Shown one piece after another: positions 25,526-45,301 of a stretch of DNA of 64,000 nt. The stretch lies in the sequence record PV654397.1, one strand, 5' to 3'. A program made the position numbers and the translations under genes. The notes beneath the pieces are model-generated. The model had not been told where the DNA came from and searched no databases. It saw nothing but the letters and a program-made list of their open reading frames with translations. Every line of letters begins with the position of its first letter. The first letter of the stretch is position 1.

Positions 25526-25535
25526 AGTATTCTCT

Positions 25536-25930: not shown

Positions 25931-25941
25931 ATAGTACTCTT

Positions 25942-26127: not shown

Positions 26128-26128
26128 A

Positions 26129-26565: not shown

Positions 26566-26590
26566 GTGTAGTTCTCCTTATATTCCTTCT

Positions 26591-26619
26591 ATAGTACACC
26601 AGTACTGAAAGGATGTCAA
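26591..26619 (-). promoter_or_regulatory. sigma70 promoter of the small-paralog operon
   Basis: TTGACA-17-TACTAT with AGTACT in the spacer. Confidence 0.75.
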
Positions 26620-26636
26620 GGGTTTTGTTTATGGGG

Positions 26637-26644
26637 TATAAATA
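26637..26644 (+). promoter_or_regulatory. T4-type late promoter
   Basis: Exact TATAAATA (T4 gp55 consensus) upstream of the first MLPF gene. Confidence 0.65.
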
Positions 26645-26671
26645 TGATATAATGAATAAAGGAGAAGAAAT

Positions 26672-27820: not shown

Positions 27821-27828
27821 ATTAATAT

Positions 27829-27887
27829 GCCAGTACTTGATACTGGCTTTTTTGATTAAATATAGTATAATGAATAAAGGAGGAAAT
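27829..27887 (+). repeat. conserved intergenic cassette (GCCAGTAC hairpin terminator, ATTAAATATAGTATAAT, AAAGGAGG RBS); further copies from 29004, 31441, 32654, 33917, 34727, 35936 and 40647, variant at 30254, terminator only at 43015
   Basis: Near-identical ~65-bp sequence read before eight MLPF genes. Confidence 0.85.
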
Positions 27888-28997
27888 ATGTTACCTTTTG
27901 TAAGAATGGTTAAGTACGGGAATATTGCACCAGTACCGAAAAAAATAAAGAAAGTTATAGCAGGATATGATAATTTATATGTACTATATGGTGATGGTTC
28001 GCTATATGGTTGTGGAATCAATAACTATCAACAGTTAAATATTGATGGAACTGCTACACAAAATAATTGGGTACTAATTACCAATGGTGTTAGTAATGCA
28101 TGGGCTGGTGGATACAATATTTTATATTTGAAAGAAGATAAATTTATAATGCACGGAACTAATGTCTCATTAGGTTTAGGAAATACTACAATTCCATTAG
28201 GTGGAGTAGATGTAACTTCTTCATTCCCAGATATCTCTAATATTAAAATGATATCCATTGGTTTTGATTCAATGCACTATGTTAGTGCTGATGGTACAAC
28301 TGTATATGGAAGAGGTATGAACACAAATGGTTCTGTTGGTTCAGGTAGTACTTACTCACAGAGTACTTTCACTTCAGTACTGAATAATGGAACTAATCAG
28401 GTTATTGATATATTTGGTAACGTTAATAATACAGTGCTTCTAACATCGAATGGTGAGCTTCGAGCATGTGGGACAAGTGCTTATGGTTCTATAGGAAATG
28501 AAACTGGTAAGTGGACATCGTTTGGTTTAAAATTATCTGGCACTAAAATAATGGGTGGTAATGGGTATAGTACGCTTGCATATACAAATTCGGGAATGTA
28601 CCACTCAGGGTGGCAGTTAAATGGGGAACTAGGAAATGGTTTAGATACTAACGTACAGGTATATCCATTTCAATTTAACTCTAAAACGATAGATAGCAAG
28701 ATAGATAAAATTGCCAAATCATCATCTGGGTCATATGTTAACATGTACTCAACAACAGAAGGAAAGATATATACGACAGGTTCGTTTGGTAAAAACGGGT
28801 CAACTACTGCATTGAATTTGTTCACCAATACATTAACACTTATAAATTACAATCCAGATACCGCCTCGTTGTATACGTGCACAAACTTCAGTGTTGTGTA
28901 TGATGGTAATGAAACTATTGCTGTAAGTGGTAGTCCTACATATGTACCAGGGGGCGTTGCCGCTAATAGATGGACTACAATTCCATTACCCAAGTAA
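27888..28997 (+). CDS. MLPF-tag RCC1-like protein 2
   Basis: Start trimmed from 27759; MLPFVRMVKYGN; LYGCGINNYQQL repeats. Confidence 0.85.
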   Translation: MLPFVRMVKYGNIAPVPKKIKKVIAGYDNLYVLYGDGSLYGCGINNYQQLNIDGTATQNNWVLITNGVSNAWAGGYNILYLKEDKFIMHGTNVSLGLGNTTIPLGGVDVTSSFPDISNIKMISIGFDSMHYVSADGTTVYGRGMNTNGSVGSGSTYSQSTFTSVLNNGTNQVIDIFGNVNNTVLLTSNGELRACGTSAYGSIGNETGKWTSFGLKLSGTKIMGGNGYSTLAYTNSGMYHSGWQLNGELGNGLDTNVQVYPFQFNSKTIDSKIDKIAKSSSGSYVNMYSTTEGKIYTTGSFGKNGSTTALNLFTNTLTLINYNPDTASLYTCTNFSVVYDGNETIAVSGSPTYVPGGVAANRWTTIPLPK

Positions 28998-29068
28998 TAC
29001 TATGCCAGTACTTGATGCTGGCATTTCTTTTTGTATTAAATATAGTATAATGTATAAAGGAGGAAAAT

Positions 29069-30250
29069 ATGTTACCTTTTGTTAGAATGTTTGATTATGG
29101 GAACGTCGTTGAGCCACCTGTGGGTACACGTTATACCTGTAGTGACTATAGTGCGACTTATAGTTTAATAAAGGATGGTGTGTTATATGTATCTGGGATG
29201 AATAACTATTATCAGTTAGGTAATAACACTAACGTAACACGTTACAACGAGTGGTTAAAAGTTCCAGAGACTGATAGTGTTAAGTTTTGTAGTACTGGTT
29301 ATAGTCAGACAATGTATCTGACTAACAATGGTAGGATAATGATAGCAGGGGAAGATCCTACTTTCGGTGCGACGGCGGTGAGTGTAAAGGTTTGGACTGA
29401 TATAACTTCTAGATTTAGTGCAGTTGATACTAAAAAGATTGTTTATATTTCAATAGAACGCTTTGGTGTAATGATGATCATGGAAGATGGTTCAGTATGG
29501 GCGTGTGGTGTTGATAATACTGGTTGGAGTGGACAAGGGAGTAAGACTGTTGGTTTCTTTACTTTCAGACAAATATACACCGGAAGTGCAGGAAGTGCAG
29601 TTGCTTGTACTGCTGGTACTGGTACTGCGAGAATTCTGTTAGCTAATGGAACAATCTTGTCCTCTGGTACTAATACATATCATCAATGTAATGCTAGTAC
29701 TAATCCGTCTGTTCTAACATTCACTGAATCATTCCCTGGGGTTGATCCTTCATTGATATATCAAATCAAGATGTGTAATAACAACTGTATTATATTTTTG
29801 AGTGATAAGAGATATTACGGTACTGGCTGGGGAAGTTTTGGTGCATTGGGTGATGGTGATATTACGGGTTCGAATAATAAATTCTATGCAGGTACATTGT
29901 CAGTTGCTCCTAAAAACATGCGTGCTTATATGTCGTATCTATGTAGTTCTTCTGGGGATTCTAGTATGTACATAGGCGATGATAATTTCATATACACCTG
30001 CGGTTATCGTGGGAGGAACTTAATAAATGCCACTACAGATATTGGTACGTTCACGAAATGCATTCAAAGTGCACAAGGATACAAGAATGGACTTATATAT
30101 AGTGGGAATTATTGTGCTGTAGTTTTTGATCCAGATTTGGGTACAGGAATGACTTATGCGGTTTCATCACCAAAATTGAATTCTCCAGCACCACAGGCTA
30201 GTGTTCCAGCATTGGGTATGAGTTCGTTACAATCTATCATTTTACCATAA
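29069..30250 (+). CDS. MLPF-tag RCC1-like protein 3
   Basis: MLPFVRMFDYGN; LYVSGMNNYYQLGN. Confidence 0.85.
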   Translation: MLPFVRMFDYGNVVEPPVGTRYTCSDYSATYSLIKDGVLYVSGMNNYYQLGNNTNVTRYNEWLKVPETDSVKFCSTGYSQTMYLTNNGRIMIAGEDPTFGATAVSVKVWTDITSRFSAVDTKKIVYISIERFGVMMIMEDGSVWACGVDNTGWSGQGSKTVGFFTFRQIYTGSAGSAVACTAGTGTARILLANGTILSSGTNTYHQCNASTNPSVLTFTESFPGVDPSLIYQIKMCNNNCIIFLSDKRYYGTGWGSFGALGDGDITGSNNKFYAGTLSVAPKNMRAYMSYLCSSSGDSSMYIGDDNFIYTCGYRGRNLINATTDIGTFTKCIQSAQGYKNGLIYSGNYCAVVFDPDLGTGMTYAVSSPKLNSPAPQASVPALGMSSLQSIILP

Positions 30251-30324
30251 ATGATACCAGTACTGAAATACGTACTGGTATTTTTTTGTAAATACATTAT
30301 AATTATTATATGGAGATTTTAGTT

Positions 30325-31434
30325 ATGTTACCTTTTGTTAGAATGTTTGATTATGGGAATATCACACCTGGTCCTAAAAATATAATTAAAGTTGGTGCTT
30401 CTACACAGGGTCAATTCTTATTGACTGATTCACATGATTTATATTACATAGGAAGAAATCAAGGTGGTGAATCTGGAAATGGTAATACCAACACGGTATC
30501 TTCATGGATATTAGTAAGTGCAAATGTTTCTAATTTTTTCGTGGGTGATCGTGCACTTGTTATTATTAAAAATGATAATACGATATGGACATCAGGTCAA
30601 ACGTACTGGTTCACATCTTCTACAACTACTTCTTACAGTACTACATTAGTTGATAGAACCAGTTGGTTCACAAATGCAATACCAGTAAGTGAAATTGCTA
30701 ATATTGTATGTTCAAATGGTGTAATATTTGTACTTAGTTCTAGTTCAGTACTATATGGTGCAGGATATAATGGATACCGTGGTGCATTAGGTATTGGTTC
30801 ATCATCAATTTATACATTAACTCAATGTGCTACTAACGTACGTAAAGTAATGACAACGGGAAATGATAGCATATATATTAGTACTGACAATAGGTTATAT
30901 AGTTCTGGCTGGAATGATAGTGGTCAACATGGAACAAACAACCGAGTTCAGGTTAATACATGGGCGGCTAGAGCGAGTGGGGTTATTGATGCTACGGTAG
31001 GTGGTACTAATATAATGTATTACAATGGTACGCGTTATAATACCTGTGGATATGCCCCTAATTTCTATGGTTCTACTGTACAATTAATGACGGGTATTCC
31101 TGATGCGACTCTACCTAATATTGCTCCTTTATACATGACTAATACAATGAATTCTAGCTCTGCTGCTATGATGATAATAACTCCATCCTACCAGAAAGGT
31201 GTAGGTGGGGTTCGTGGTTTAGGATTAGGTGGCGACCAGAGAGGTGTGGAAAATACAGCAGTTAATTTGGATTTGAAAGTTCCGTTGAGTTCGATTAAAG
31301 ACATTGTTTTTAGTGATGGTTTAACTTCAATATTAACAAAAGACGGAGATGTATATAGTACTGGATCGTATTACGCCATTCCTGGAGCAAGCGAGGATGT
31401 TGCAGTCTTTACTAAAATTGATTTACCAAAATAA
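30325..31434 (+). CDS. MLPF-tag RCC1-like protein 4
   Basis: Start trimmed from 30310; LYGAGYNGYRGALGIG. Confidence 0.85.
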   Translation: MLPFVRMFDYGNITPGPKNIIKVGASTQGQFLLTDSHDLYYIGRNQGGESGNGNTNTVSSWILVSANVSNFFVGDRALVIIKNDNTIWTSGQTYWFTSSTTTSYSTTLVDRTSWFTNAIPVSEIANIVCSNGVIFVLSSSSVLYGAGYNGYRGALGIGSSSIYTLTQCATNVRKVMTTGNDSIYISTDNRLYSSGWNDSGQHGTNNRVQVNTWAARASGVIDATVGGTNIMYYNGTRYNTCGYAPNFYGSTVQLMTGIPDATLPNIAPLYMTNTMNSSSAAMMIITPSYQKGVGGVRGLGLGGDQRGVENTAVNLDLKVPLSSIKDIVFSDGLTSILTKDGDVYSTGSYYAIPGASEDVAVFTKIDLPK

Positions 31435-31504
31435 CATAATGCCAGTACTTGAGTACTGGCATTCTTTTTGATTAAATATAGTATAATGAATAAAGGAGGG
31501 AATT

Positions 31505-32647
31505 ATGTTACCTTTTGCAAGAATGGTTAAGTACGGGAATATTGCACCAGTTCCTGTAGTTCCTACAATAAAAGATTTTAAGATCGGCTTTTCACATGAA
31601 GTATTATTGGACAGTGCAGGTGATGTATGGGGTATTGGATACAATACAGATGGGCAGTTGGGTTTTTTGGATGCAAATACCAATTCACTAGGTGCATGGT
31701 CTAAGATATATACTGATGTTCGATTAATTGGAGTTACTGCTAGATATACAGTGGTAGTTACTAATAATAATAGAATACTATACGCAGGAAATAACTTAAT
31801 TTCTAGTACTACTACTCTTGGGTGGACCGATATAACTGCCAGTATGGGTCCGGTTGCAGTGGATAGCATCGATGCATTATATTGTACAGAGGGTATGATG
31901 CATATTAAAACTTCAGATGGTTCTTTATATGCATATGGTCGTAACATGAACGCAAACAGTGGTGTTACTGGTGGTGTTATTAGTGTTGCAACTAAGGTTA
32001 ATTTGCCTTCTGCTGTAAATGACATGCGATATACGTTTAGTTATGGTTCAGTACTATGTCGATTGGATACGACTTCTATATACGCATGGGGACGAAACAC
32101 AAATGGTGAATTAGGTCAGGGTAATGCAACAGCCATTGTTACTCCAAAACTATTGTCTGGTTCTTCTATTGCAATGGGTACTTCGTATAATGCTACTGCA
32201 ATTGTTTCTGGTTCTGCATCGTTAGTTACGTGTGGTGGTCAGAATAGTGGTCAGTTGGGTAATGGTATTACTACTGATGGTAATGTATACACCTTTGGTG
32301 TCAGGACATACCCAGGCGATCTTAATACAATAAGAAGTCCAGTGGATTGCAGTACAACTTACACCTCTGCATTTATGAGTCCAGATGGTATATATTACAC
32401 TGGTGCTAACCGAAGTATGTTTGGTGGTATTAGTGGTGCTTCTACCGTTGCTGTATATACTAAATGTAGTGATTTACCAATAACATATTCTAATATAATT
32501 CAGTGGAGTAGTGGTACTATAGGTGGTGCTATATGTAGTAGTACAGAGTTATACCAATGTGGTATAGGTAGATACATTGCTGGTGATGGTGCGAGCACAA
32601 CCAGGTATGGATTTAGGAAGACACCATTACCTTGGGATACTTATTGA
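31505..32647 (+). CDS. MLPF-tag RCC1-like protein 5
   Basis: MLPFARMVKYGN; IYAWGRNTNGELGQG. Confidence 0.85.
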   Translation: MLPFARMVKYGNIAPVPVVPTIKDFKIGFSHEVLLDSAGDVWGIGYNTDGQLGFLDANTNSLGAWSKIYTDVRLIGVTARYTVVVTNNNRILYAGNNLISSTTTLGWTDITASMGPVAVDSIDALYCTEGMMHIKTSDGSLYAYGRNMNANSGVTGGVISVATKVNLPSAVNDMRYTFSYGSVLCRLDTTSIYAWGRNTNGELGQGNATAIVTPKLLSGSSIAMGTSYNATAIVSGSASLVTCGGQNSGQLGNGITTDGNVYTFGVRTYPGDLNTIRSPVDCSTTYTSAFMSPDGIYYTGANRSMFGGISGASTVAVYTKCSDLPITYSNIIQWSSGTIGGAICSSTELYQCGIGRYIAGDGASTTRYGFRKTPLPWDTY

Positions 32648-32718
32648 CATTACGCCAGTACTCTGTACTGGCTTTTCTTTTTGTATTAAATATAGTATAA
32701 TGAATAAAGGAGGGAATT

Positions 32719-33909
32719 ATGTTACCTTTTGTTAGAATGTTTGATTATGGGAATATCACACCTGAACCTCTTCAAATTAAGAAAATAATACCAACTGATA
32801 CTGAGGTTGTTGTACTTTATACCGACGGTCAACTATACGCACGAGGCAGTAATAGTTATGGGAAGTTTGGTAGAGGAAATAATAATGCAGTAAGGTCGTG
32901 GACATTAATTAGAGAAAATGTCAAAGATTGCTGGATGACACAAGGAACTTTGTTAGTACAAGATAATGACTTAAATTATTTTTATTGTGGATATGGTAGT
33001 CATATTGGTTTACCAACTAGTACTACTACGTTTTTAAGTTATAACCAATATATTGAAAATTTGTACACACAAAGTTCAAGTACTTCAATTAAACAGATGT
33101 ATGCAGGTACTACGTGGTTTACTTTCTTAATGGATAATAATACAATATGGAGTACAGGGTGGAATAGTGCTAGACAATTCGCAGATGGTACAGGAACTAC
33201 TTATCAAATATCAGATGGTTCATTTGTTAAAGCGGTAACACCAGATGTTGATATTGCACAAATAATGTCAACATATAACTGTGTAATGTTGTTTGATAAA
33301 CAAAATAATTTATATATTGGTGGTAGTACATCTGGCATAAGTACTAGTACCACATGGACACCATTTAATGAATATACTTTATATCAGCCAAGTACCACAT
33401 ATACAAAAACATTACAATATACTGTTTGTTCATTTGGTGCTGTCAGTGCTTTAGTAGAGAATCCAAGTACAGGAGCACGTCAGTTTCTAGTTGGTGGATT
33501 AGCTAATAATGGAGCATGGGGAAATAAAACTACATCTAGCACTGTTAATGGAGTTTTAGGAAATAATAGTGCTACATTACCACCCGGTACTTTGTATTCA
33601 ATTCATACTGGATACCCAGCACAATCTAGTATACTAGTTACGAGTGCAGGTGTATATGCAACTGGTTTAAATGCGAGTAGTTATGCTGGCACATTGGGTG
33701 TTGGTTATGATGCTACCATTGGTAAATTTACTGCATGTCCATTGCCGTCAGAAATAACATATTCTATGTATGATAAAATAAAAATATATCGCGGTTCGTT
33801 GCGTACTTTCCTAACTGCTGATATGAAAAATATATATTCAACCGGAACTTATGATGATGGTGGTCCTAGTACAAATAGATATGTTCTGGATACACCTAGA
33901 CAATTGTAA
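32719..33909 (+). CDS. MLPF-tag RCC1-like protein 6
   Basis: LYARGSNSYGKFGRG. Confidence 0.85.
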   Translation: MLPFVRMFDYGNITPEPLQIKKIIPTDTEVVVLYTDGQLYARGSNSYGKFGRGNNNAVRSWTLIRENVKDCWMTQGTLLVQDNDLNYFYCGYGSHIGLPTSTTTFLSYNQYIENLYTQSSSTSIKQMYAGTTWFTFLMDNNTIWSTGWNSARQFADGTGTTYQISDGSFVKAVTPDVDIAQIMSTYNCVMLFDKQNNLYIGGSTSGISTSTTWTPFNEYTLYQPSTTYTKTLQYTVCSFGAVSALVENPSTGARQFLVGGLANNGAWGNKTTSSTVNGVLGNNSATLPPGTLYSIHTGYPAQSSILVTSAGVYATGLNASSYAGTLGVGYDATIGKFTACPLPSEITYSMYDKIKIYRGSLRTFLTADMKNIYSTGTYDDGGPSTNRYVLDTPRQL

Positions 33910-33981
33910 TGTAAAAGCCAGTACTTGATACTGGCTTTTCTTTTTGTATTAAATATAGTATAATGAATAAAGGAGGGAAAT

Positions 33982-34719
33982 ATGTTACCTTTTGCAAGAA
34001 TTGTTAAGTACGGGAATAAAATTGAATATAAGCCACATGGTGAACAATTAATCACGACAATAGGAACAACACAATTTACAGTTCCTGCTGGCGTTACCGA
34101 AATATCAGTATGTGTTATTTCGCCGGGTGGTCAACGCGGTGCTGGTGGCGGCTTATCGTGGCGTAATAATATTCCGGTTTCTGGTGGTGAGTACTTAAGT
34201 GTTTCTCTTACACATCCCAACACTACTACAGCAGTTGAAAACGGTTTATATCGTGGAACTGAAAAACTATGTGTTAGCTTCACTGGTGCATATACGGTTG
34301 GTGGACTAGGTGGAAAAGCTGCTAACGCTATTAATGATGGTGGTGGTAATGGTGGCAACACTGGTTTAAGTGGTGGTGCAGTCATTGGTGGTGGTGCTGG
34401 TGGCTACACTGGTAAAGGTGGTAACGGAAATGCAATCACTGGTGAAAATGGTGCTGGCGGTGGCGGTGGTGGTGGTGCATTCTATAATACCTCGTTCATT
34501 GGTACGGGTGGTGGTACTGGTATCATTGTTCAAGGTGCTAATGGTATTGGTGGTAGCTACGATGGTTCATATAATGGTGGTGCTGGTAGTGGTGGTGCTG
34601 GTAAGAGGTATGGTGGTGGTGGTAGTATATGGGATAATTCTTCTTATACGGCGGCTGGTGGTGGTGCTGTGCGAATAATATGGGGACGTGGGAGATATTA
34701 TCCTAACAATTCAGTCTAA
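33982..34719 (+). CDS. MLPF-tag glycine-rich protein (tail-fibre-type Gly-rich domain, not RCC1)
   Basis: MLPFARIVKYGN, then FTVPAGVTEISVCVISPGG...GAGGGLSWRNNIPV...GGGAVRIIWG. Confidence 0.8.
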   Translation: MLPFARIVKYGNKIEYKPHGEQLITTIGTTQFTVPAGVTEISVCVISPGGQRGAGGGLSWRNNIPVSGGEYLSVSLTHPNTTTAVENGLYRGTEKLCVSFTGAYTVGGLGGKAANAINDGGGNGGNTGLSGGAVIGGGAGGYTGKGGNGNAITGENGAGGGGGGGAFYNTSFIGTGGGTGIIVQGANGIGGSYDGSYNGGAGSGGAGKRYGGGGSIWDNSSYTAAGGGAVRIIWGRGRYYPNNSV

Positions 34720-34791
34720 AATATAGGCCAGTACTTGATACTGGCTTTTCTTTTTGTATTAAATATATTATATTGAATAAAGGAGGAAAAT

Positions 34792-35922
34792 ATGTTACCT
34801 TTTGCAAGAATGGTTAAGTACGGAAATAAAAGACCATCTAATAATATCAAAAAGATTTCATGTACAACCAATAACAGTGTTTTGGTGCTCACCGAAAGTG
34901 GAGATTTGTATGGTTTTGGATTCAATTCAGGTGGTGAACTTGGCACTGGTGCAACAACTAGTGTTACTTCAGTTATTCAAATTGACACTGGCGTTGATGA
35001 TGTATGGGGTGGTAGTCTATGTGCAATGTACAGAAAAGGCGATGAATTCTTTGGCAGCGGGGACGGTTCTTATTATGGTTCAAGTGCTGTTAACTCAACC
35101 ACATTTGTAAATGTAACACACATATTCCAAGATATAGATATTCTTAATATTAAGAAAATTAAAATGACAACAGGTTTGTTTATATTAATGCAAAACGGCA
35201 ACTTATATGGATGTGGGGTAAACACCAATTGTCAATTTGGTACTGGTGAGGCAGTGAATTTTCGTTATCCTATAGCTACATTAACACAAACGGATGTTGT
35301 TGATTTTGATATTTTAGGAAACTCTAGTATAATATTAAAGACCGATGGGTACATGTACAGTGCGGGTGATAATGGTCGTGGACAACTTGGTAGTTCTACT
35401 GCAACCACACTTCTGGTATATACACAAATTAGTAAATTTCCAAACGTAACCAATTTGGATCTGTTCGGACACTCACAAGTTACTTCATTATTCAAAGATA
35501 GTGATGGTAAAACGTGGTTGAGTGGTAATAGTTATGGTATTGATTACCCAGTAGTAGCTACAACATTATTCAGTAAAGAAGCACCAGTACCTGAAGGTAC
35601 ATTTCGTTTTATCAACACAAGGGCAGGGTCAAATACACCAATAATATGTACACCCACTGGGTATTATGTTGCTGGTACTAACCCTTATGGTGCATATGGT
35701 ATAGGTACGAATGTAACTCTGACAACATTCACAAGAATGGATTCTATGGATAGATACATATCTGATTATAATAATGTTCCTGTTTTCGATGGATGTTTCT
35801 ATGGGACATATTTTGCAGTTGGGGAACGTCTGTTTGGTGCAGGTAATGGTAATACTGGTAATGTTCCTGGATATACTGGATCACAGCGTAACTATGTGGA
35901 AATTAATTATAAAAATAATTAA
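34792..35922 (+). CDS. MLPF-tag RCC1-like protein 7
   Basis: LYGFGFNSGGELGTG. Confidence 0.85.
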   Translation: MLPFARMVKYGNKRPSNNIKKISCTTNNSVLVLTESGDLYGFGFNSGGELGTGATTSVTSVIQIDTGVDDVWGGSLCAMYRKGDEFFGSGDGSYYGSSAVNSTTFVNVTHIFQDIDILNIKKIKMTTGLFILMQNGNLYGCGVNTNCQFGTGEAVNFRYPIATLTQTDVVDFDILGNSSIILKTDGYMYSAGDNGRGQLGSSTATTLLVYTQISKFPNVTNLDLFGHSQVTSLFKDSDGKTWLSGNSYGIDYPVVATTLFSKEAPVPEGTFRFINTRAGSNTPIICTPTGYYVAGTNPYGAYGIGTNVTLTTFTRMDSMDRYISDYNNVPVFDGCFYGTYFAVGERLFGAGNGNTGNVPGYTGSQRNYVEINYKNN

Positions 35923-36000
35923 ACCTTAATACTATGCCAGTACTTGATACTGGCTTTTCTTATTGTATTAAATATAGTATAATGAATAAAGGAGGAAAAT

Positions 36001-37176
36001 ATGTTACCTTTTGCAAGAATGGTTAAGTACGGAAATAAATTACCACCACCATCGGGTGTTATGAAGATAAGTACATCTTATGCACATATGGGTATGTTAT
36101 TCGATACTGGCAATTTATATCTACGTGGAAATGGTTCACTGTACAGGTTAGGAAATGATAGTACTACGACAGTATCAAATGGGTGGGTCAAGTGTCCATA
36201 TAAAGTTTCTGATGTTTGGTGCTTCTTCGCAGCGACAATTATACTTACGACTGATGGAGAATTTTACTTAGCTGGTCAAATGGGTTATGTCGGTGTCTCT
36301 GCATCACCAGTTCCTGGATGGACTAATATCACATCTTTATTGTCTACAATACCAGCACTTACTACAGTAGTAGATATAGCTGCTACTGAATCTACCGCAT
36401 CAAATGGTGCGTTATTGATTTTGTTAAGTAATGGGGACTTATATGGGATTGGGCGTAATACAGGAGGTGCATTGGGTGTTACTGGTGCAAAAACAACGCC
36501 GATCCAGATTGCTACTGGAGTTAGTATGATTGCTGGAACAACGTCTGGCGATGCTTTCCATTATGTAAAAAATAATCAATACTACAGATGTGGCAATAAC
36601 GCAAGTTACAACTTAGGGTCAAGTTCTTCTAAACTTTCTACATTTACGGTAAGTACTGATATATCGGGAACAGTTATTGGTATTTCATGTACTACATTAA
36701 CGACTTTAGTACTTACATCTAATAATGGTAATATTAGAGTATATACTGCTGGTATAAACACTGATTATACTTTAGGTATTGGTTATGGAGATACAAGTGT
36801 TACAATGAGTCCATTTAGTATGACTCCAGCAATTGTTGGTATCACACCAGATGCTAATTCAATGAATAACCACTGTTTGAATTATTCTTTAATGGCAATG
36901 ACACAGAATGGTAAGCTTTATACATGTGGTAGTGGTGTTGCTCTTGGTTGGCCTATTTCTATTGAATCAGAAAGATCTTATTATCACCAGGTACAATATG
37001 AGGATATGGATATTGCACCAGATGTTAATGCATTTTCAGCACAAGGGGGTTCCGGTTTGTTATACGCATTAGTGGGGACAAATGAGGTGTACTGGTGTGG
37101 AAGTGGTTCTTATTTCCAGGAACAGAGTGCAGGTACACGACAAGTTAAAATGAAGAAAATGATTTTACCAGAATAG
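36001..37176 (+). CDS. MLPF-tag RCC1-like protein 8
   Basis: LYGIGRNTGGALGV. Confidence 0.85.
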   Translation: MLPFARMVKYGNKLPPPSGVMKISTSYAHMGMLFDTGNLYLRGNGSLYRLGNDSTTTVSNGWVKCPYKVSDVWCFFAATIILTTDGEFYLAGQMGYVGVSASPVPGWTNITSLLSTIPALTTVVDIAATESTASNGALLILLSNGDLYGIGRNTGGALGVTGAKTTPIQIATGVSMIAGTTSGDAFHYVKNNQYYRCGNNASYNLGSSSSKLSTFTVSTDISGTVIGISCTTLTTLVLTSNNGNIRVYTAGINTDYTLGIGYGDTSVTMSPFSMTPAIVGITPDANSMNNHCLNYSLMAMTQNGKLYTCGSGVALGWPISIESERSYYHQVQYEDMDIAPDVNAFSAQGGSGLLYALVGTNEVYWCGSGSYFQEQSAGTRQVKMKKMILPE

Positions 37177-37185
37177 GAGGAAAAT

Positions 37186-38304
37186 ATGTTACCTTTTGCA
37201 AGAATGGTTAAGTACGGGAATGTAAGAGAAGTTACGAAAATACGTAAAATGGTCACGGACGGAACTAGTGGAATTTTATTCCTAACAACAAGTGGTAAAT
37301 TATATGCTGCGGGACCAAATACAAATGGTAAGTTTGGTGATGTTACTACATCGGCTGATAAGTGGACTTTGATATATGAAAATGTTGATGACTTTTACTA
37401 TTCACCTACGTGGACATTTTTAAAACTCAAAGACGGTCAGTATATGTGCAGCGGTGAAACTACTGCATTTGGTTATCCAACAAGTAATATATTTGTTAAT
37501 TGTAGTTCGATTTTTAATGCAGTAACTGGTACAATAATTGATGTTCAAGTTAATGCGTTACGTAACTGTATAGGGGTACTGACAAACTTAGGAGAATTGT
37601 GGTTCATTGGTACGAATACGCAATATATATTTGGAATGAGCACACCAAGTAGTAGTACATCTTTTGTTAAAAATACGATAGTCAGTGATGTCAAGTCATT
37701 CAAATTAATGTATGCAAACGTATGGGCATTAACTAATTCTGGTGTTCTTTATGGTTCTGGAAACCCAAACGCTAATCAAATACCTAGTTCCACTGGGTTT
37801 ACCCAAATTGCAACAGGGGTTTTGGGTTATTCAGCAACAGTTGCTGTTGTAGTGCTTAATACAGCTAGTGGTGTATTTGCCAGAGGAAACGTCAACAATA
37901 AATATGGAACATCAGTGTCTGGTTCAACTGCAACTTTAGTTTCTTGTTCGTTACCATTCACATATAATGCAGCTACATTTGCATTTCCTAAAATCGTTTA
38001 TAATAGTAGTTCGGTTGCAGCAAAAATAATAATCCAGAATGGAACCGATTATTATGTGTCAGCAGTTTCCGATAATTATGGGTTTACCAGTACAAATGCA
38101 AGTTTTACACCTGGACCGGTTCCAGCATTTACTAAGATGATCAATGCACCAACTTCAATAGAGCCTATATTCTTTGACAGTACATATTCATCATATTATA
38201 TAGAAAATGACATATGTTATGTTACAGGTAGATTGTTCCCAATACCTAGCTACACTACATCAGATAAAGCATTAATATATACTGAAGAAAAAATAGTAAT
38301 ATAG
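37186..38304 (+). CDS. MLPF-tag RCC1-like protein 9
   Basis: LYAAGPNTNGKFG; directly coupled to the previous gene. Confidence 0.85.
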   Translation: MLPFARMVKYGNVREVTKIRKMVTDGTSGILFLTTSGKLYAAGPNTNGKFGDVTTSADKWTLIYENVDDFYYSPTWTFLKLKDGQYMCSGETTAFGYPTSNIFVNCSSIFNAVTGTIIDVQVNALRNCIGVLTNLGELWFIGTNTQYIFGMSTPSSSTSFVKNTIVSDVKSFKLMYANVWALTNSGVLYGSGNPNANQIPSSTGFTQIATGVLGYSATVAVVVLNTASGVFARGNVNNKYGTSVSGSTATLVSCSLPFTYNAATFAFPKIVYNSSSVAAKIIIQNGTDYYVSAVSDNYGFTSTNASFTPGPVPAFTKMINAPTSIEPIFFDSTYSSYYIENDICYVTGRLFPIPSYTTSDKALIYTEEKIVI

Positions 38305-38316
38305 GAGAGAATAATT

Positions 38317-39465
38317 ATGTTACCTTTTGTTAGAATGTTTGATTATGGAAATGAAGCACCAGCATTACCAAAAATAAAGAAATTGTCAACTGGATACCAA
38401 CATACTATGCTTTTAACGCAGAATGGCGATTTATATGCTAAGGGTAGTAATGCAGCAGGACAGCTAGGTACTGGTAATACAACAGCAGCGAGGGAATGGA
38501 TATTAGTTAATAGTTCAGTTGCTGATGTTTATTGCTCTGCTAACGGTACATTGATTAAAAAGAATGATGAATCATGGTGGAGTTCTGGTTCCGGTGCAGC
38601 AGCAGGTGTCAATTCAGTTGTGAATACATGGACCAATGTGAGTGCACAAATCAATAGTATGCTTACTTCTCTCCCTGGTTCCTTTATTAAACAATTTGTA
38701 TCCTCGTTTTATAGCTCAATGGCTATACGTTCGGATGACACAGTTTGGGTAATTGGGCAAAACAACAATGGTGAAATTACTGGAACTACTGCAAAATATA
38801 ATACATGTGTGAATATAACCTCTAGTTTCCCCAGTACACCAGTAAAAATCTATGGTAGTGAGAACTGTATGGCTTATACTGACAGTACTGGTGCATTTTA
38901 TTATAGTGGTCAAATGGTCGGTGGGAATGCTGGTGGTTCAGCAAATGCAACAACATTTACTAGATATAATGTTGGTTTGAGTACAAATAAAATAATAGAC
39001 TTTAATACTACTGGCTATGGTTCATTCTTTATTATAGAAACTACTGCTGGAGTTAAACAGGTATACGCTGGTGGTTACCAACGATATGGTCAATTGGGTG
39101 ATGGTGGCACTACAACAACAATACTTGCTCCTGCACAAATAACAACACCTAACTCTAATTTAATTAAATTGTTTAAAGGTACGTCAATGTACAATCAGCA
39201 TTTAATAACCAAATCTGGTATATATGCAACTGGTCAAAACTCCCAATCACAATACAATGGTACTTTGGGTATTGGTTCAAACATTGATGCTACTACATAT
39301 ACACTGGCACAAATATCATTATCATCATATGATGATATTGAAATACATACAACATTGGATAGAACATTCTTATGGGCAGGTGATTATGTTTATAGTACAG
39401 GTTTAAATTCTACATATTCATCAATCACTAGCAACTCATATGTGTTGGATATGCCATCAATATAA
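38317..39465 (+). CDS. MLPF-tag RCC1-like protein 10
   Basis: LYAKGSNAAGQLGTG. Confidence 0.85.
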   Translation: MLPFVRMFDYGNEAPALPKIKKLSTGYQHTMLLTQNGDLYAKGSNAAGQLGTGNTTAAREWILVNSSVADVYCSANGTLIKKNDESWWSSGSGAAAGVNSVVNTWTNVSAQINSMLTSLPGSFIKQFVSSFYSSMAIRSDDTVWVIGQNNNGEITGTTAKYNTCVNITSSFPSTPVKIYGSENCMAYTDSTGAFYYSGQMVGGNAGGSANATTFTRYNVGLSTNKIIDFNTTGYGSFFIIETTAGVKQVYAGGYQRYGQLGDGGTTTTILAPAQITTPNSNLIKLFKGTSMYNQHLITKSGIYATGQNSQSQYNGTLGIGSNIDATTYTLAQISLSSYDDIEIHTTLDRTFLWAGDYVYSTGLNSTYSSITSNSYVLDMPSI

Positions 39466-39479
39466 CAAGGAGAAAAAGA

Positions 39480-40640
39480 ATGTTACCTTTTGTTAGAATG
39501 TTTGATTACGGAAACATTGCACCATCCCCTGCTGCCATTAAAAAATTAGTTGCAGGGTATAACTGGGTTATGGTATTGGGTAGTAATGGTAAATTATATA
39601 CCCGTGGTTCCAATTCAAGTGGTCAGTTGGGTTTAGGAGACAATACAACCAGAACATCATGGACAGTAACTGCATCGGATGTCATTGATGTATGGTGTGG
39701 TCAGTATGCTACAATGATTCACAAATCAGATGGTACATATCAATACACAGGGCGACAATACAATGTGTGTATGGGTACATCATCTGTTAATGCATGGACT
39801 TCTATGCAAACTCTTATTAATCAAGTTAATTCCCAAGGAACAATTTCAGAAATATCACTAGGGAATAACTTCATTTCAATACTTATGAGTAATGGGACAA
39901 TTTGGAGTGGTGGTTATAACACAGGAGGGCAGCTTGGCAATGCTTCTTATTCTAACAGTTTTACTACATTAGTAAAATCAATTATACCAAGTGGTGCGGT
40001 TCCGAAAAGGATTATTGCAGGTATAAACATGTGTTCATTTATTGCCGAAAGTGGTAGACTATATTACACAGGTGAAGTTAATGGTGATACTAACAGTACT
40101 TCAACCGTGAGTTTTTATAATGTATTCGCATTATCAGATAGATTACCAGCAACTGTTAGTACTATAGCATTTATAAGTACTGTTAATGGTATGGTTCAAG
40201 GTATTGCTAGAAACAATAGTACGTCTGTTGTTACTGTGTATACTGGTGGTGACCAATCATATGGACAGGCTGCTACTAATACAGCAGCATCAACCAGCAT
40301 ATTGACAACTGTTGTGGCAAATCAACCACAAGGAAATATATTAGATATAGGATATGGGTACGGATATTACTCGAACTTTGTTATTACTGATACTGGCGTA
40401 TACGTTGCTGGTAATAACTCTGCAACTTCATACTATGGACAATTAAGTACAGGTTCAACTACTAACGTATTAACTTACACTAAATCTATTACTCCTGATT
40501 TGAATTTCAAAGATGTTAAAATCCAAAGTTGCTATGGTAAAACATATATGACAGATGGAAACAAAATATATTCAAGTGGTACTAACCTAGTATCTGGTGG
40601 TACTGCTAGTACTGTATTTGTTGAAGATTCACCAATTTAA
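39480..40640 (+). CDS. MLPF-tag RCC1-like protein 11
   Basis: LYTRGSNSSGQLGLG. Confidence 0.85.
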   Translation: MLPFVRMFDYGNIAPSPAAIKKLVAGYNWVMVLGSNGKLYTRGSNSSGQLGLGDNTTRTSWTVTASDVIDVWCGQYATMIHKSDGTYQYTGRQYNVCMGTSSVNAWTSMQTLINQVNSQGTISEISLGNNFISILMSNGTIWSGGYNTGGQLGNASYSNSFTTLVKSIIPSGAVPKRIIAGINMCSFIAESGRLYYTGEVNGDTNSTSTVSFYNVFALSDRLPATVSTIAFISTVNGMVQGIARNNSTSVVTVYTGGDQSYGQAATNTAASTSILTTVVANQPQGNILDIGYGYGYYSNFVITDTGVYVAGNNSATSYYGQLSTGSTTNVLTYTKSITPDLNFKDVKIQSCYGKTYMTDGNKIYSSGTNLVSGGTASTVFVEDSPI

Positions 40641-40710
40641 AATAATGCCAGTACTCTGTACTGGCTTTTCTTTTTGATTAAATATAGTATAAAGAATAAA
40701 GGAGGGAATT

Positions 40711-41856
40711 ATGTTACCTTTTGTTAGAATGTTTGATTACGGAAATGAAGTGCAGCCATTGCCAGGTATTAAAAAGATTGTTGCACGAGGTATATATTGT
40801 ATGGTACTACTTGATAGTGGGGATTTATACATAAGAGGTCAAAACTTAGGTAGTACGTTTGGTAATGGTTCAGCCACTAATACTATATATACTGGTGATT
40901 GGGTTTTAAGTACAACTGGAATAAAAAATATATGGAGTAATTCAGGTACTACGATTTGTACAACATTTGACAACCGAGTTCTTTCAAGTGGATCTATTCG
41001 TGGCTTAACTGGAAGTTCAGCATCATCAACTACCACATTCACTGACAGAACAACTACTTTTATTAATGCTGGTTTAAATCCAGAACAAATCGTTGATGTT
41101 GCTCTAAATGGATATGATATTTTCGCACTAGCGGCATCTGGAGAAGTTTACAGTGGAGGTATTAACTATTCAGGCCAACATGGAAGTACTGGAGCACGAG
41201 CATTCCAATTAAACACAGTATACACGAATGCCAAAAAAATTTCCCTAAGTCCAGAACAAGCGGGTACTTTTTGGTATTTGGATACTTCAAATGATTTTTA
41301 CGGGTGTGGAAATGGAAGTGTTGGTCAGATATTAGGAACTACAACAGTGAGTTCCAAAAAATTAATAAGTTCTGATGTAATTGATTTTACTGCTAATATT
41401 AATTGTTTCTTTATTTCTAAATCTGATGGTTTATATTGTGCAGGTTCACAGTTTAATGGTCAACTTGGGAATGGAGTTAGAAGTAACAATATTGGTGAAG
41501 TTGGTAGAACAACTTTATATAAACTCCCAAATTTCTCGTCAGCACCTAGTTACATTTTTAACGATACATACTTAACTGTTGTCCTTTATGAAAACAAATG
41601 GTATTGTACAGGTTCAACAAGCAAATCTGGAGCCGGAATTAATAATAGTAGCAGTAGTTTTATTGTTAATAATACAATTATACCTGACAATTCAAATCCA
41701 AGATATGCAATTAATAATGACAATAGTTATGTTGTATCTAAATCTGGGTTATTATATGGTACAGGAATATATTCAAGCTCAACAGATCTATTACCAGGTT
41801 ACTCAACATCACAATATGAATATGTGTTATTGAGTACTAAGGGTATGAATAATTAA
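40711..41856 (+). CDS. MLPF-tag RCC1-like protein 12
   Basis: LYCAGSQFNGQLGNG. Confidence 0.85.
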   Translation: MLPFVRMFDYGNEVQPLPGIKKIVARGIYCMVLLDSGDLYIRGQNLGSTFGNGSATNTIYTGDWVLSTTGIKNIWSNSGTTICTTFDNRVLSSGSIRGLTGSSASSTTTFTDRTTTFINAGLNPEQIVDVALNGYDIFALAASGEVYSGGINYSGQHGSTGARAFQLNTVYTNAKKISLSPEQAGTFWYLDTSNDFYGCGNGSVGQILGTTTVSSKKLISSDVIDFTANINCFFISKSDGLYCAGSQFNGQLGNGVRSNNIGEVGRTTLYKLPNFSSAPSYIFNDTYLTVVLYENKWYCTGSTSKSGAGINNSSSSFIVNNTIIPDNSNPRYAINNDNSYVVSKSGLLYGTGIYSSSTDLLPGYSTSQYEYVLLSTKGMNN

Positions 41857-41871
41857 TAAAGGAGAAAAAGA

Positions 41872-43008
41872 ATGTTACCTTTTGCAAGAATGGTTAAGTA
41901 CGGGAATATAAAAGTAAAGAGTACTATCCAAAAAGTTATCCTTGGTGGTGGTGGTCAATGTGTGGTAACATTACTCAGTGATGGTAGAGTGTATGGACGT
42001 GGATACAATACAACATATGGGTTGGGTACTGGTACAACAACATTCGTAAGTGATTGGGTATTAATGGGCGATAATATTGTTGATATCCATTCAAATGGTG
42101 TTACTGGCACATTCCTTATTACCAAAGAAAATAGAATTTTGTATTCTGGTTTTGCGACACCAATCAATGGCACAACATCACATTATACACGTTTCACTGA
42201 TTTAACATCAACTGTATTTGCTGCGGTGGATGTTAGTAATATTAAAACAATTACGGGAAATGGTAATGTTACAATGGTTCTTTTGAATGATGGTTCACTT
42301 TATGGGAGTGGTGCAAATACAGGGGTTATAGGTAATGGTAGTAACGTTGCATTATCAACACAAACATATGTGACTAATGATGTGCGTGATGTGAAAACAT
42401 ATCCATCAATGAACACTATAACAAAAAATAATAATCAAATATTGGCTAGTGGTATTTTATACCAAGGCGTGAACGGTACAAATTCATCAATAAACACGTC
42501 TTCATATACATTACTGTACACATTACCGAGTTCTGATTGTTTTCAATTTGCATTTGATACATATACATTTGGATATGTTGACCCTAGTACTAACACTTCT
42601 TATATAAGAGGTATACCAATAAATGGTTCATTAGGTAATGGCGTTACTAATAATACAGCAGTTACAACATGGGTTACTAAAGTTTGGAATACACCAATTG
42701 ATAGTTCTATACCTAATAAATCATATACAACTAACCATGTCTCCTTGTTCAATGATGGAAACTTATGGACAACTGGTGCATCTAGTGTAGGTTATTCCAA
42801 TGGTACAAATAGCACAACAGCTAATACATGGACCAGTTCATCTAATTTACCATTCAACACTAATAACATAACAGACTATGCTTTTGGTGGTAGTATTACT
42901 GTAGTGGTAATCGACTACAGGACTATGTACATACTAGCTAACAACGCCATTGCTGGTACTGCTACGACAACTTATAAATTTGAGCCATATAATTCTCCAC
43001 CAGTTTAA
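41872..43008 (+). CDS. MLPF-tag RCC1-like protein 13
   Basis: VYGRGYNTTYGLGTG. Confidence 0.85.
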   Translation: MLPFARMVKYGNIKVKSTIQKVILGGGGQCVVTLLSDGRVYGRGYNTTYGLGTGTTTFVSDWVLMGDNIVDIHSNGVTGTFLITKENRILYSGFATPINGTTSHYTRFTDLTSTVFAAVDVSNIKTITGNGNVTMVLLNDGSLYGSGANTGVIGNGSNVALSTQTYVTNDVRDVKTYPSMNTITKNNNQILASGILYQGVNGTNSSINTSSYTLLYTLPSSDCFQFAFDTYTFGYVDPSTNTSYIRGIPINGSLGNGVTNNTAVTTWVTKVWNTPIDSSIPNKSYTTNHVSLFNDGNLWTTGASSVGYSNGTNSTTANTWTSSSNLPFNTNNITDYAFGGSITVVVIDYRTMYILANNAIAGTATTTYKFEPYNSPPV

Positions 43009-43040
43009 TATAATGCCAGTACTATGTACTGGCTTTTCTT

Positions 43041-43691: not shown

Positions 43692-43768
43692 GAGTACCTC
43701 AATTAAATCGCTGTAAAATTGTACATTATAAAATGATTAAATAAAGTATAACACAAGGAGATTTTATC

Positions 43769-44893: not shown

Positions 44894-44898
44894 AATTA

Positions 44899-44928
44899 AT
44901 CCAGTACTATTATAGTACTGGATTTTTA
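44899..44928. terminator. bidirectional terminator between convergent gene blocks
   Basis: ATCCAGTACTAT-T-ATAGTACTGGAT palindrome flanked by A and T tracts. Confidence 0.75.
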
Positions 44929-45300: not shown

Positions 45301-45301
45301 T

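What the first reader, a model, noticed from the sequence alone, without database searches (positions are those of the whole stretch)
27829..41910. Identical DNA cassettes flank the variable genes: integron-like recombination scaffold
Seen: a ~65-bp unit (GCCAGTAC-N3-5-TACTGGC-T tract, ATTAAATATAGTATAATGAATAAAGGAGG) precedes eight genes. The first ~36 coding bases exist as two nearly invariant DNA alleles, ATGTTACCTTTTGTTAGAATGTTTGATTA(T/C)GG and ATGTTACCTTTTGCAAGAATGGTTAAGTACGG, with synonymous sites conserved while the rest of each gene is very divergent. Four genes (37186, 38317, 39480, 41872) lack the cassette but keep the coding allele. Inference: about 100 bp of recurrent homology is kept by gene conversion and lets whole cassettes be gained, lost or reordered by homologous recombination. 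No recombinase is visible in the window.
Basis: partly seen in the sequence, partly recalled or inferred. Interest (0 to 1): 0.66.

Follow-up and report, generated by a model that had tools for sequence, protein, structure and literature searches.

The report
Shuffled virion-protein gene array, jumbo phage
A giant E. coli phage carries 15 very different genes in a row that all share the same stop-start control unit and the same first 12 codons, and comparison with related phages shows that these short shared stretches are where genes have been swapped, inserted and deleted.

Summary
The window is identical to the first 64 kb of Escherichia phage WPEC5, an Asteriusvirus of the 121Q/PBECO4 jumbo group. 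Positions 26637-44924 hold 15 plus-strand paralogues: 14 RCC1-like beta-propellers and one glycine-rich protein. They share 17-27% amino-acid identity but all begin MLPF.R...YGN.

The ~65-nt unit is a regulatory cassette: an intrinsic terminator hairpin with a U-run, a promoter-like element (TAAATATAGTATAAT) and a Shine-Dalgarno site. The same layout, and the same 12-residue peptide, occur in distant genera (Munch, fENko-Kae01; peptide also in GAP32, fHe-Yen9-04 and XbC2). Function therefore explains much of the conservation. Orthologues are virion proteins by published mass spectrometry, so I infer that the peptide is a virion-incorporation tag.

The recombination reading is also supported:
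- Eight related phages have eight different gene orders.
- Homology blocks end at the cassette or leader.
- phAPEC6 carries a chimeric junction where 121Q has an extra gene.
- Nearly identical orthologues carry different leader alleles, which indicates short-patch conversion.

"Integron-like" fails as membership: the genome has no integrase or resolvase, and each cassette has its own promoter-like element. The closest known system is the PeSL cassette shuffling of T4-type phages. I rate this a new variant of a known kind, of moderate interest.

The parts
26637..26671 (+). Promoter-like element and SD before the first array gene. It contains the T4-late-type octamer TATAAATA (26637-26644) overlapping TAAATATGATATAAT.
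   Evidence: The octamer occurs only 12 times in the 381-kb genome; 9 of these lie within 70 nt upstream of an ORF, including the major capsid gene.
26672..27820 (+). Array gene C, RCC1-like propeller, FDY leader
27829..27887 (+). Cassette 1: terminator hairpin (27829-27847) plus U-run, TAAATATAGTATAAT (27857-27871), SD
   Evidence: fold -12 kcal/mol, z -4.8
27888..28997 (+). Array gene F, RCC1-like, hybrid leader (V at codon 5 with VKY)
29002..29068 (+). Cassette 2; the stem contains a G-U pair
29069..30250 (+). Array gene G, RCC1-like, FDY leader
30253..30324 (+). Variant cassette: longer hairpin with a compensated A-T pair, TAAATACATTATAAT, weaker SD
30325..31434 (+). Array gene A, RCC1-like, FDY leader. 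The WPEC5/WPEC3 homology breaks right after its codon 12.
31438..31504 (+). Cassette 3 (11-bp stem)
   Evidence: -16.1 kcal/mol
31505..32647 (+). Array gene D, RCC1-like, VKY leader. Modelled as a seven-bladed propeller with a disordered N-terminus. The orthologue phAPEC6 gp005 was found in virions.
32654..32718 (+). Cassette 4
32719..33909 (+). Array gene B, RCC1-like, FDY leader
33913..33981 (+). Cassette 5
33982..34719 (+). Array gene E: glycine-rich 245-aa protein unrelated to the propellers except for the 12-residue leader
34725..34791 (+). Cassette 6 (promoter variant with two changes)
34792..35922 (+). Array gene O, RCC1-like, VKY leader
35936..36000 (+). Cassette 7
36001..40640 (+). 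Four genes joined by 9-15-nt junctions without a cassette, probably one transcription unit: H 36001-37176, R 37186-38304, ad 38317-39465, ae 39480-40640. All carry the leader. The H orthologue phAPEC6 gp006 was found in virions.
40647..40710 (+). Cassette 8
40711..43008 (+). Genes S (40711-41856) and I (41872-43008), tight junction. WPEC5/WPEC3 homology resumes exactly at the ATG at 41872.
43015..43033 (.). Terminator hairpin closing the main array. It is palindromic and usable on both strands.
43041..43691 (-). Embedded 216-aa gene of unknown function, conserved at this place in all compared phages
43769..44893 (+). Outlying array gene J, RCC1-like, diverged leader MLPFVLLFDYGN
44898..44924 (.). 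Bidirectional terminator hairpin after J

Best explanation
The locus is a hypervariable tandem array of genes for virion-associated proteins in an Asteriusvirus jumbo phage. Thirteen in-array members and the outlier J are RCC1-like beta-propellers, and one member is a glycine-rich protein.

The intergenic unit is a composite regulatory cassette. An intrinsic terminator ends the upstream transcript. It is followed at once by a promoter-like element (TAAATAT-N2-TATAAT, related to the T4-type late octamer that precedes the first gene) and a Shine-Dalgarno site.

The first 12 codons encode a disordered N-terminal tag, M-[LI]-P-F-x-R-[MIL]-x-x-Y-G-N. I infer that this tag directs or anchors the proteins in the virion.

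Every gene is bracketed by the same ~100 bp. The median longest exact run shared between cassette-plus-leader units is 30 nt, and the maximum is 54 nt. The phage's general homologous recombination (a UvsX/RecA-type gene is present) can therefore cross over there. The outcomes are single-gene insertions and deletions, replacement by distant alleles, reordering, and short-patch conversion of the leader. Any gene that lands between two such joints is automatically terminated, transcribed, translated and tagged.

Shown: the anatomy, the comparative mosaicism and the chimeric junctions. Inferred: promoter activity and timing, the role of the tag, and the recombination enzyme.
For: Anatomy:
- Hairpins fold at -12 to -16.5 kcal/mol, z -3.6 to -5.7, each followed by a U-run.
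- Of 60 array hairpins in 7 phages, 59 keep the pair flanking the core, as G-C, A-T, T-A or G-U, while the loops vary.
- The G17 record annotates them as terminators.

Promoter:
- With one mismatch allowed, 10 of 13 genome-wide matches lie in the array.
- The same motif follows hairpins in Munch and fENko-Kae01.
- TATAAATA precedes both the first array gene and the capsid gene.

Tag:
- It is invariant in paralogues that are 17-27% identical.
- It is present in 5 other jumbo phages, two assigned to Mimasvirus, one to Eneladusvirus and two without a genus assignment (Munch, fENko-Kae01).
- It is the only similarity between E and the propellers, and distant E homologues lack it.
- It is modelled as a low-confidence coil outside the propeller.
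- Six phAPEC6 array proteins were detected in virions (PMC7247149), as was GAP32 gp001 (PMC5259590).

Recombination:
- 8 phages have 8 different orders.
- 113 of 130 homology-block ends lie within -110 to +60 of a leader ATG.
- WPEC5 and WPEC3 have flanks 99% identical but the inner ~11 kb replaced, with breaks at codon 12 and at an ATG.
- The phAPEC6 E|D junction is a chimera of the two 121Q junctions that flank an extra gene.
- Per-gene identities are incongruent between phages and between two metagenomes.
- Orthologues 94-97.5% identical in the body differ at 5-9 of 36 leader positions.
- Leader codon identity is 0.77-0.90 in Asteriusvirus but 0.58-0.65 in Munch and fENko, which keep the same peptide.
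Against: - No transcript data: the only RNA raw-read run gave nothing usable, so promoter and terminator activity are predictions.
- The promoter class is unresolved. There is no consistent -35, and only the first gene has the exact late octamer.
- The tag's role is inferred from presence in virions. Nothing shows that the peptide is required, retained or cleaved, and it has no conserved Glu of the kind T4 prohead protease uses.
- The block-end statistic is partly built in, because any alignment of an orthologue runs on into the conserved flanks.
- Some nucleotide-level conservation is identical in both Asteriusvirus clades (TTA 108/108, CCT 106/108). It could reflect selection on the mRNA start region rather than conversion.
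- Recombination was not observed directly; it is read from end products in sequenced genomes.
Confidence: 0.72

Rival explanations
1. Functional constraint only. The cassette and leader are alike because each must work as terminator, promoter, ribosome-binding region and protein tag. The arrays differ between phages only through duplication, divergence and loss, and the repeats play no part in recombination.
For: The cassette layout, promoter motif and peptide are conserved across genera. Codons 2-4 and 6 are the same in both Asteriusvirus clades. Munch-type arrays keep the peptide with freer codons, which shows that the peptide itself is under selection.
Against: - Duplication and loss cannot give a chimeric junction.
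- They cannot give neighbouring genes at 100% and 77% identity between two phages whose flanks are 99% identical.
- They cannot give leader patches with 5-9 changes in genes 94-97.5% identical.
- They cannot explain a clade I phage carrying a gene 96% identical to clade II copies (K).
Confidence: 0.08
2. Site-specific, integron-like cassette exchange. The hairpins act as attC-like sites for a dedicated recombinase that excises and inserts gene cassettes.
For: A hairpin lies between most genes. Whole-gene units move. PeSL authors also drew the analogy with integrons (reference list of PMC2839356).
Against: - The 381-kb genome has no Phage_integrase and no Resolvase match, although controls were positive.
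- Several junctions changed where there is no hairpin at all; homology starts exactly at the ATG.
- The stems are short GC-rich helices followed by U-runs.
- Every cassette has its own promoter-like element.
Confidence: 0.03
3. Nucleotide-level selection on the leader as an RNA or DNA signal, such as a translation-initiation or enhancer region or a target for a regulator or nuclease, explains the synonymous conservation without conversion.
For: Non-preferred codons are fixed across 108 genes. CCT is used at 31% in gene bodies and AGA at 40%. Gly11 is never GGT, although GGT makes up 63% of body Gly codons. Lys9 is AAG in 57 of 59 cases against 26% in bodies. The strictest conservation covers the SD to codon 7, roughly a ribosome footprint.
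Against: Related arrays with the same peptide use CCA/CCG, AGG/AGA/CGT and all four Gly codons, so the peptide's function does not demand these bases. Allele-linked synonymous states (VK with TAC in 46 of 47 genes, FD with TAT in 30 of 35) and patchy allele swaps in orthologues point to shared descent of leader haplotypes. This rival can be true in addition to conversion.
Confidence: 0.2
4. The different gene orders are assembly errors at repeats in short-read phage genomes.
For: Short-read metagenome contigs do break at every cassette. CMSTMSU is a poor assembly full of frameshifts.
Against: The repeats are about 100 nt with exact runs of at most 54 nt, shorter than ordinary reads. The same adjacencies recur in independent isolates: K-A in three phages, G-Q in three, S-I in two. 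Differences include divergent alleles, not only order. CMSTMSU was left out of the quantitative tests.
Confidence: 0.03

Closest known systems
PeSL (promoter-early stem-loop) cassettes of T4-type phages (Arbiol et al. 2010, PMC2839356; Comeau et al. 2014, PMC4122927)
   Same: Short intergenic composites of stem-loop terminator, promoter and SD are repeated in a hyperplastic region. Indels and replacements between close relatives have crossovers inside the cassettes, and exchange is by homologous recombination without a dedicated recombinase. The phAPEC6/121Q chimeric junction mirrors their RB49/phi1 example.
   Different: - The phage group differs: a RaK2-like jumbo Asteriusvirus.
- The promoter is not a clear sigma-70 early promoter, and the genes encode virion proteins.
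- The hairpin lies upstream of the promoter with a U-run.
- The homology continues 36 nt into the coding sequence, and this leader alone serves as a joint where no cassette is present.
- Mini-circles were not tested here.
- The window's early region (0.9-21 kb) has a separate family that looks much more like classical PeSLs.
T4 internal proteins with their N-terminal capsid-targeting signal, in polymorphic ip loci (Repoila et al. 1994, as cited in PMC12373910)
   Same: A short N-terminal peptide is shared by otherwise unrelated, non-essential-looking proteins that end up in the virion. The genes sit in loci that differ strongly between close relatives.
   Different: I saw no sequence resemblance to the T4 signal; my recollection of that signal is from memory. 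There is no conserved Glu cleavage site. The location of the propellers (head interior, capsid surface or tail hairs) is unknown. The proteins are about 40-kDa propellers, not small basic proteins. I could not read the 1994 paper.
Modular receptor-binding proteins of phages: conserved N-terminal anchor, exchangeable C-terminal domain (established knowledge)
   Same: A conserved N-terminus with a hypervariable remainder, recombination breakpoints at the boundary, and several paralogues per genome.
   Different: Known anchors are folded domains of roughly 100 residues or more. Here the shared part is 12 residues, predicted to be disordered, and no host-binding role has been shown.
Integron gene-cassette arrays
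   Same: A row of single-gene units in one orientation separated by hairpin-forming repeats, with units gained, lost and reordered.
   Different: No IntI and no attI/attC. Each unit has its own promoter and terminator. Joints also occur in the coding leader without a hairpin.

Membership tests
Integron | IntI-type tyrosine recombinase next to the array | tested here: not met
   PF00589 has no match in the whole 381-kb genome, with controls positive in 14 of 14. PF00239 also has none.
Integron | Promoterless cassettes expressed from one common promoter and separated by attC sites | tested here: not met
   Each of 8 cassettes has its own promoter-like element and SD. The hairpins are 7-11-bp GC stems followed by U-runs.
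PeSL regulatory cassettes | Intergenic composite of stem-loop, promoter and SD, repeated in a variable region | tested here: met
   The array is the most variable stretch: other phages cover only 13-27% of it at megablast.
PeSL regulatory cassettes | Strong sigma-70-like early promoter with -35, -10 and an AT-rich upstream region | tested here: inconclusive
   The -10 TATAAT is perfect. A -35-like TTGATA lies in the hairpin loop, 18 nt before TATAGT, in only some cassettes (listed for the cassette at 27829). The late-type octamer before the first gene and the virion products suggest late timing.
PeSL regulatory cassettes | Indel and replacement breakpoints between close relatives fall inside the cassettes | tested here: met
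   Chimeric junction between phAPEC6 and 121Q. WPEC5/WPEC3 and WPEC5/Turkey3 junctions.
PeSL regulatory cassettes | Excised mini-circles joined at a cassette | not testable with these tools
   Only contigs were available for the DNA runs. This needs raw long reads or inverse PCR.
T4-type capsid-targeting signal | Short N-terminal peptide shared by unrelated proteins that are found in the virion | tested here: met
   Shared by the propellers and the Gly-rich protein. Virion detection of orthologues comes from the literature and from the record note for ENKO_525c.
T4-type capsid-targeting signal | Removal by the prohead protease at a conserved (L/I)-x-E site (established knowledge of T4 gp21) | tested here: not met
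   No conserved Glu in or just after residues 1-12; residue 13 is E in only 4 of 15 window genes. Cleavage itself is not testable here.
RCC1-like repeat beta-propeller | RCC1 repeats forming a seven-bladed propeller | tested here: met
   PF00415 and PF13540 score above their cut-offs in several members. The AF2 model has pLDDT 83. Foldseek top hits are UVR8, RCC1 and HERC2 RLD, with E down to 6e-22 and TM 0.76.
Intrinsic (Rho-independent) terminator | GC-rich stem-loop directly followed by a U-run | tested here: met
   Termination in vivo was not tested.

The most novel reading that the evidence does not exclude
The 12-residue N-terminus M-[LI]-P-F-x-R-[MIL]-x-x-Y-G-N is a previously undescribed portable virion-loading or anchoring tag of RaK2-like jumbo phages. 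The array is an exchangeable repertoire of tagged cargo (propeller adhesins or injected effectors). Its regulatory cassette and tag-coding stretch double as built-in recombination joints, so any gene swapped in is at once expressed and delivered with the particle.
Probability: 0.4. Interest if true: 0.7.

Novelty: new variant of a known kind. Interest (0 to 1): 0.55.

Why it matters
It extends cassette-mediated modular shuffling, so far documented for T4-type phages, to the RaK2-like jumbo phages. It also shows a case where the recombination joint reaches into the coding sequence and coincides with a conserved protein tag.

It gives a concrete, testable explanation for why the RCC1-like arrays, long annotated as "DNA condensation proteins", differ so much between otherwise near-identical therapeutic-candidate coliphages.

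If the tag does load proteins into virions, it would be a simple handle for finding the cargo of other jumbo phages and for studying what these propellers do at infection.

Tried and rejected
- Expression evidence: one RNA raw-read run (X21) gave 8 partial reads on the glycine-rich stretch only, probably from another organism. The other runs were contigs, so there is no transcript starts or ends data.
- Rfam: no family in 26000-45500 at E up to 0.1.
- Velcro idea (the leader as the closing strand of the propeller): rejected. Residues 1-21 are low-confidence coil in the model, and the leader also sits on a non-propeller protein.
- Other leader-bearing genes elsewhere in the genome: none.
A profile search of solved structures gave nothing. 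Pfam reaches Gly_rich_2 only through homologues.
- Sheath family search for a second late gene: no match.
- Repoila et al. 1994 could not be read, so the comparison with the T4 ip locus rests on a citing paper and my own knowledge.
- No complex prediction was sent, because I have no candidate partner for the tag beyond gene neighbourhood.
- The large representative protein search was not used.
- No alternative genetic code was needed. The reads call stayed under 6,000 letters.
Full report
**Identity of the window.** The window is letter for letter the first 64,000 bases of Escherichia phage WPEC5 (PV654397.1, 381,326 bp). WPEC5 is a jumbo myovirus of the 121Q/PBECO4 group (Asteriusvirus). No cellular genome is held for it.

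**What is there.** Between 26,637 and 44,924 lie 15 plus-strand genes. One 216-aa minus-strand gene (43041-43691) interrupts them.
- Fourteen genes are RCC1-like. Pfam RCC1 and RCC1_2 score above their cut-offs in several members, and PHROG 4219 matches.
- An AlphaFold model of the gene at 31505 has mean pLDDT 83. It is a seven-bladed propeller starting near residue 22. Foldseek places it with UVR8, RCC1 and HERC2 RLD domains (E down to 6e-22, TM 0.76).
- The gene at 33982 encodes a 245-aa glycine-rich protein of another family (PHROG 4474, related through homologues to Pfam Gly_rich_2).
- The propeller paralogues are only 17-27% identical to one another. Even so, M1, L2, P3, F4, Y10, G11 and N12 are invariant.

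**Check of the observation.** In brief:
- The hairpin pattern, the promoter plus SD block and the leader all occur far more often than in shuffles.
- All three are confined to this array in the whole genome.
- Eight genes have the full cassette, one has a variant, the first has the promoter and SD only, and four follow the previous stop by 9-15 nt.
- The eight cassette-plus-leader units are on average 87.5% identical over about 100 nt. The longest exact runs shared by pairs are 16-54 nt, with a median of 30.

**What the cassette is: terminator.** The hairpins fold at -12 to -16.5 kcal/mol, with z scores of -3.6 to -5.7 against shuffles. Each is followed by a U-run. Among 60 such hairpins in seven phages, the pair flanking the core is G-C in 49, G-U in 4, A-T in 3 and T-A in 3, and is broken once. 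The loops vary freely. That pattern fits selection on structure. The G17 record already lists them as predicted terminators.

**What the cassette is: promoter-like element.**
- Downstream of the U-run comes TAAATATAGTATAAT, then AAAGGAGG, then the ATG.
- With one mismatch allowed, the 15-mer has 13 matches in the genome, 10 of them in the array.
- Salmonella phage Munch and Klebsiella phage fENko-Kae01 are much more distant. They show the same order: hairpin with an AGTAC core and compensated stems, U-run, the TAAATATA-N-TATAAT motif, SD.
- The first array gene is preceded by the exact T4-late-type octamer TATAAATA.
- That octamer occurs only 12 times in the genome, against roughly 84 expected from base composition. 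Nine of the 12 lie within 70 nt upstream of an ORF, one of them the major capsid gene.

I therefore read the unit as a terminator-promoter-SD cassette, probably of late timing. Activity and timing are inferred, since no transcript data could be obtained.

**What the leader is.** The peptide M-[LI]-P-F-x-R-[MIL]-x-x-Y-G-N is not peculiar to this genus.
- It heads the RCC1-like proteins of GAP32, fHe-Yen9-04 and XbC2.
- It also heads 10 genes in Munch and 12 in fENko-Kae01.
- In the model it is a low-confidence coil ahead of the propeller.
- It is the only significant similarity between the glycine-rich protein and the propellers (11 of 12 residues).
- More distant homologues of the glycine-rich protein start with a different N-terminus. 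The tag therefore looks grafted onto that cargo.

Published mass spectrometry found six members of the phAPEC6 array in purified virions: gp003, 005, 006, 007, 009 and 010. These include orthologues of the window genes at 31505 and 36001 (PMC7247149). GAP32 gp001 was also reported as structural (PMC5259590). A leader-bearing fENko-Kae01 protein carries an LC-MS/MS note. My inference, at about even odds, is that the tag directs or anchors these proteins in the particle. It has no conserved Glu of the kind used by T4-type prohead proteases.

**Evidence for recombination at these repeats: order and block ends.** I compared the arrays of WPEC5, WPEC3, Turkey3, CMSTMSU, phAPEC6, 121Q, G17 and PBECO4. 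I grouped gene bodies into orthogroups at 78% or higher nucleotide identity.
- The flanks are conserved, but all eight orders differ. They show insertions, losses, replacements and transpositions. For example, D-B-E in WPEC5 is B-E-D in phAPEC6, and gene C is first in four phages but fourth or fifth in two.
- Of 130 internal ends of 90%-or-better homology blocks, 113 lie between -110 and +60 of a leader ATG, a zone that makes up about 14% of the array. This figure is partly built in, because alignments run on into conserved flanks. It does show that the blocks are whole genes.

**Cleaner cases.**
- WPEC5 and WPEC3 have 99.4% and 99.0% identical flanks, but the inner ~11 kb is replaced. Identity ends right after codon 12 of the gene at 30325. 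It resumes exactly at the ATG at 41872, where WPEC3 has a full cassette and WPEC5 has none.
- Gene G keeps its body and leader in WPEC5 and Turkey3 but has unrelated upstream cassettes.
- 121Q has an extra gene between E and D. The single E|D junction of phAPEC6 matches the 121Q left junction up to the hairpin and the right junction from the hairpin on. That is a crossover inside the cassette.
- Per-gene identities are incongruent. WPEC5 against WPEC3 gives C 99.9, F 100, G 98.9 and I 99.2, but A 76.7, D 83.4 and B 91.0. phAPEC6 against 121Q gives 99-99.7% for A, D, E and L and 98.7% for M, but 87.8 for B. WPEC3's K is 96% identical to the clade II copies.
- Two metagenomes show the opposite pattern for the neighbours O and H: 93% and 100% in one, 99% and 92% in the other.

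**Evidence for conversion of the leader.**
- In the window, same-amino-acid codon identity is 0.80 in the leader and 0.45 in the gene bodies.
- Across 108 genes, codon 2 is TTA in 108, codon 3 is CCT in 106, and Arg6 is AGA in 101 of 104. Gly11 is never GGT, although GGT is 63% of body Gly codons.
- Munch and fENko-Kae01 keep the peptide with codon identity of only 0.58-0.65. The peptide's function therefore does not require these bases.
- Between clades, orthologues with bodies 94-97.5% identical (C, K, M) differ at 5-9 of 36 leader positions. The leader is less similar than the body in 35 of 50 such pairs.
- In C the divergent patch is about 45 nt, with homology on both sides. In M it spans nucleotides 9-33.
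- The synonymous state of Tyr10 travels with the allele: VK with TAC in 46 of 47 genes, FD with TAT in 30 of 35.
- The gene at 27888 looks like a recombinant between the two alleles.

Together these results indicate that leader haplotypes spread among non-orthologous genes. Some selection on the mRNA start region may add to this.

**Machinery.** The genome has no tyrosine or serine recombinase. It does encode a RecA/UvsX-like protein. The integron comparison therefore fails as membership, although the outcome (single-gene units gained, lost and reordered) is alike.

**Comparison with what is known.**
- The closest described system is the PeSL cassette of T4-type phages. There, terminator-promoter composites mediate indels and swaps by homologous recombination and form mini-circles (PMC2839356, PMC4122927).
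- The present case differs in phage group, in promoter type, in the virion-protein cargo, and in having a coding leader as part of the joint, sometimes the only part.
- The T4 internal proteins, with a shared N-terminal packaging signal in polymorphic loci, are the nearest analogue for the tag (PMC12373910).
- My literature searches found the RCC1 arrays mentioned for these phages, but no description of the cassettes, the tag or the shuffling. That is a limited search, not proof of absence.

**Verdict.** The primary function of the repeats as regulatory cassette and protein tag had been missed. This is a new variant of a known kind, with moderate interest.

Noticed in passing
window 870-21310, minus strand: About 26 copies of an early-type promoter cassette: an AT-rich stretch with AAAAAGTAC, -35 TTGCAA, -10 TATAAT, then a GGGGAGAA/TTCTCCCC-type stem-loop and SD. 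They sit before small ORFs. This is a classical PeSL-like layout, distinct from the array cassette (families D2, D3, D9, D10).
   Followed up: partly
whole window, densest at 1-26600: The palindrome CAGTACTG occurs 61 times against 1.1 expected. In the early promoters it abuts the -10 hexamer. The array terminator stems are a split version of it.
   Followed up: partly
window 1455-11050 and 48243-63607: A second terminator family, with a stem built on GGGCYGACCGRAGTCARCCC, often preceded by a TTGATGAAATAATTATAGC-like element. There are 13 copies (D12, D13, D20).
   Followed up: no
window 48698-51850, minus strand: 9-12 dispersed copies of 84-224-nt blocks inside a run of small ORFs. This is another paralogous gene family with a conserved segment (D1, D4, D5).
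   Followed up: no
window 43041-43691, minus strand: A 216-aa gene of unknown function (PHROG 34359, no Pfam) is embedded in the array on the opposite strand. It is kept at this spot in all eight phages compared (121Q gene 233). It was not among the phAPEC6 virion proteins.
   Followed up: partly
WPEC5 genome (L014-L033), e.g. upstream of the capsid ORF that starts at 177202 on the minus strand: TATAAATA is strongly avoided: 12 copies in 381 kb against roughly 84 expected. Nine of them lie just upstream of ORFs, which fits a T4-type late promoter.
   Followed up: partly
L010:1611-1927 (Yersinia phage fHe-Yen9-04 g528c): A BNR-repeat protein next to the RCC1-like gene starts MLPFPII. This is a partial copy of the leader on yet another kind of cargo.
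   Followed up: no
proteins P0005-P0084 (homologues of window 33982-34719): Distant members of the glycine-rich family share their own conserved N-terminus (MLEML or MIELL type). Other phage groups may use analogous short N-terminal tags.
   Followed up: no
window 21965-26565, minus strand: About 21 tightly packed ORFs of 57-75 aa (and one of 219 aa) lie directly upstream of the array, probably another tandem paralogue family.
   Followed up: no
L002:14262-14420, L003:22118-22252, L004:18962-19186, L005:21337-21561: The arrays of phAPEC6, G17, 121Q and PBECO4 end in a short or broken gene with a degenerate leader (MLPFRRIITSS or MLPFGRIITSS).
   Followed up: no
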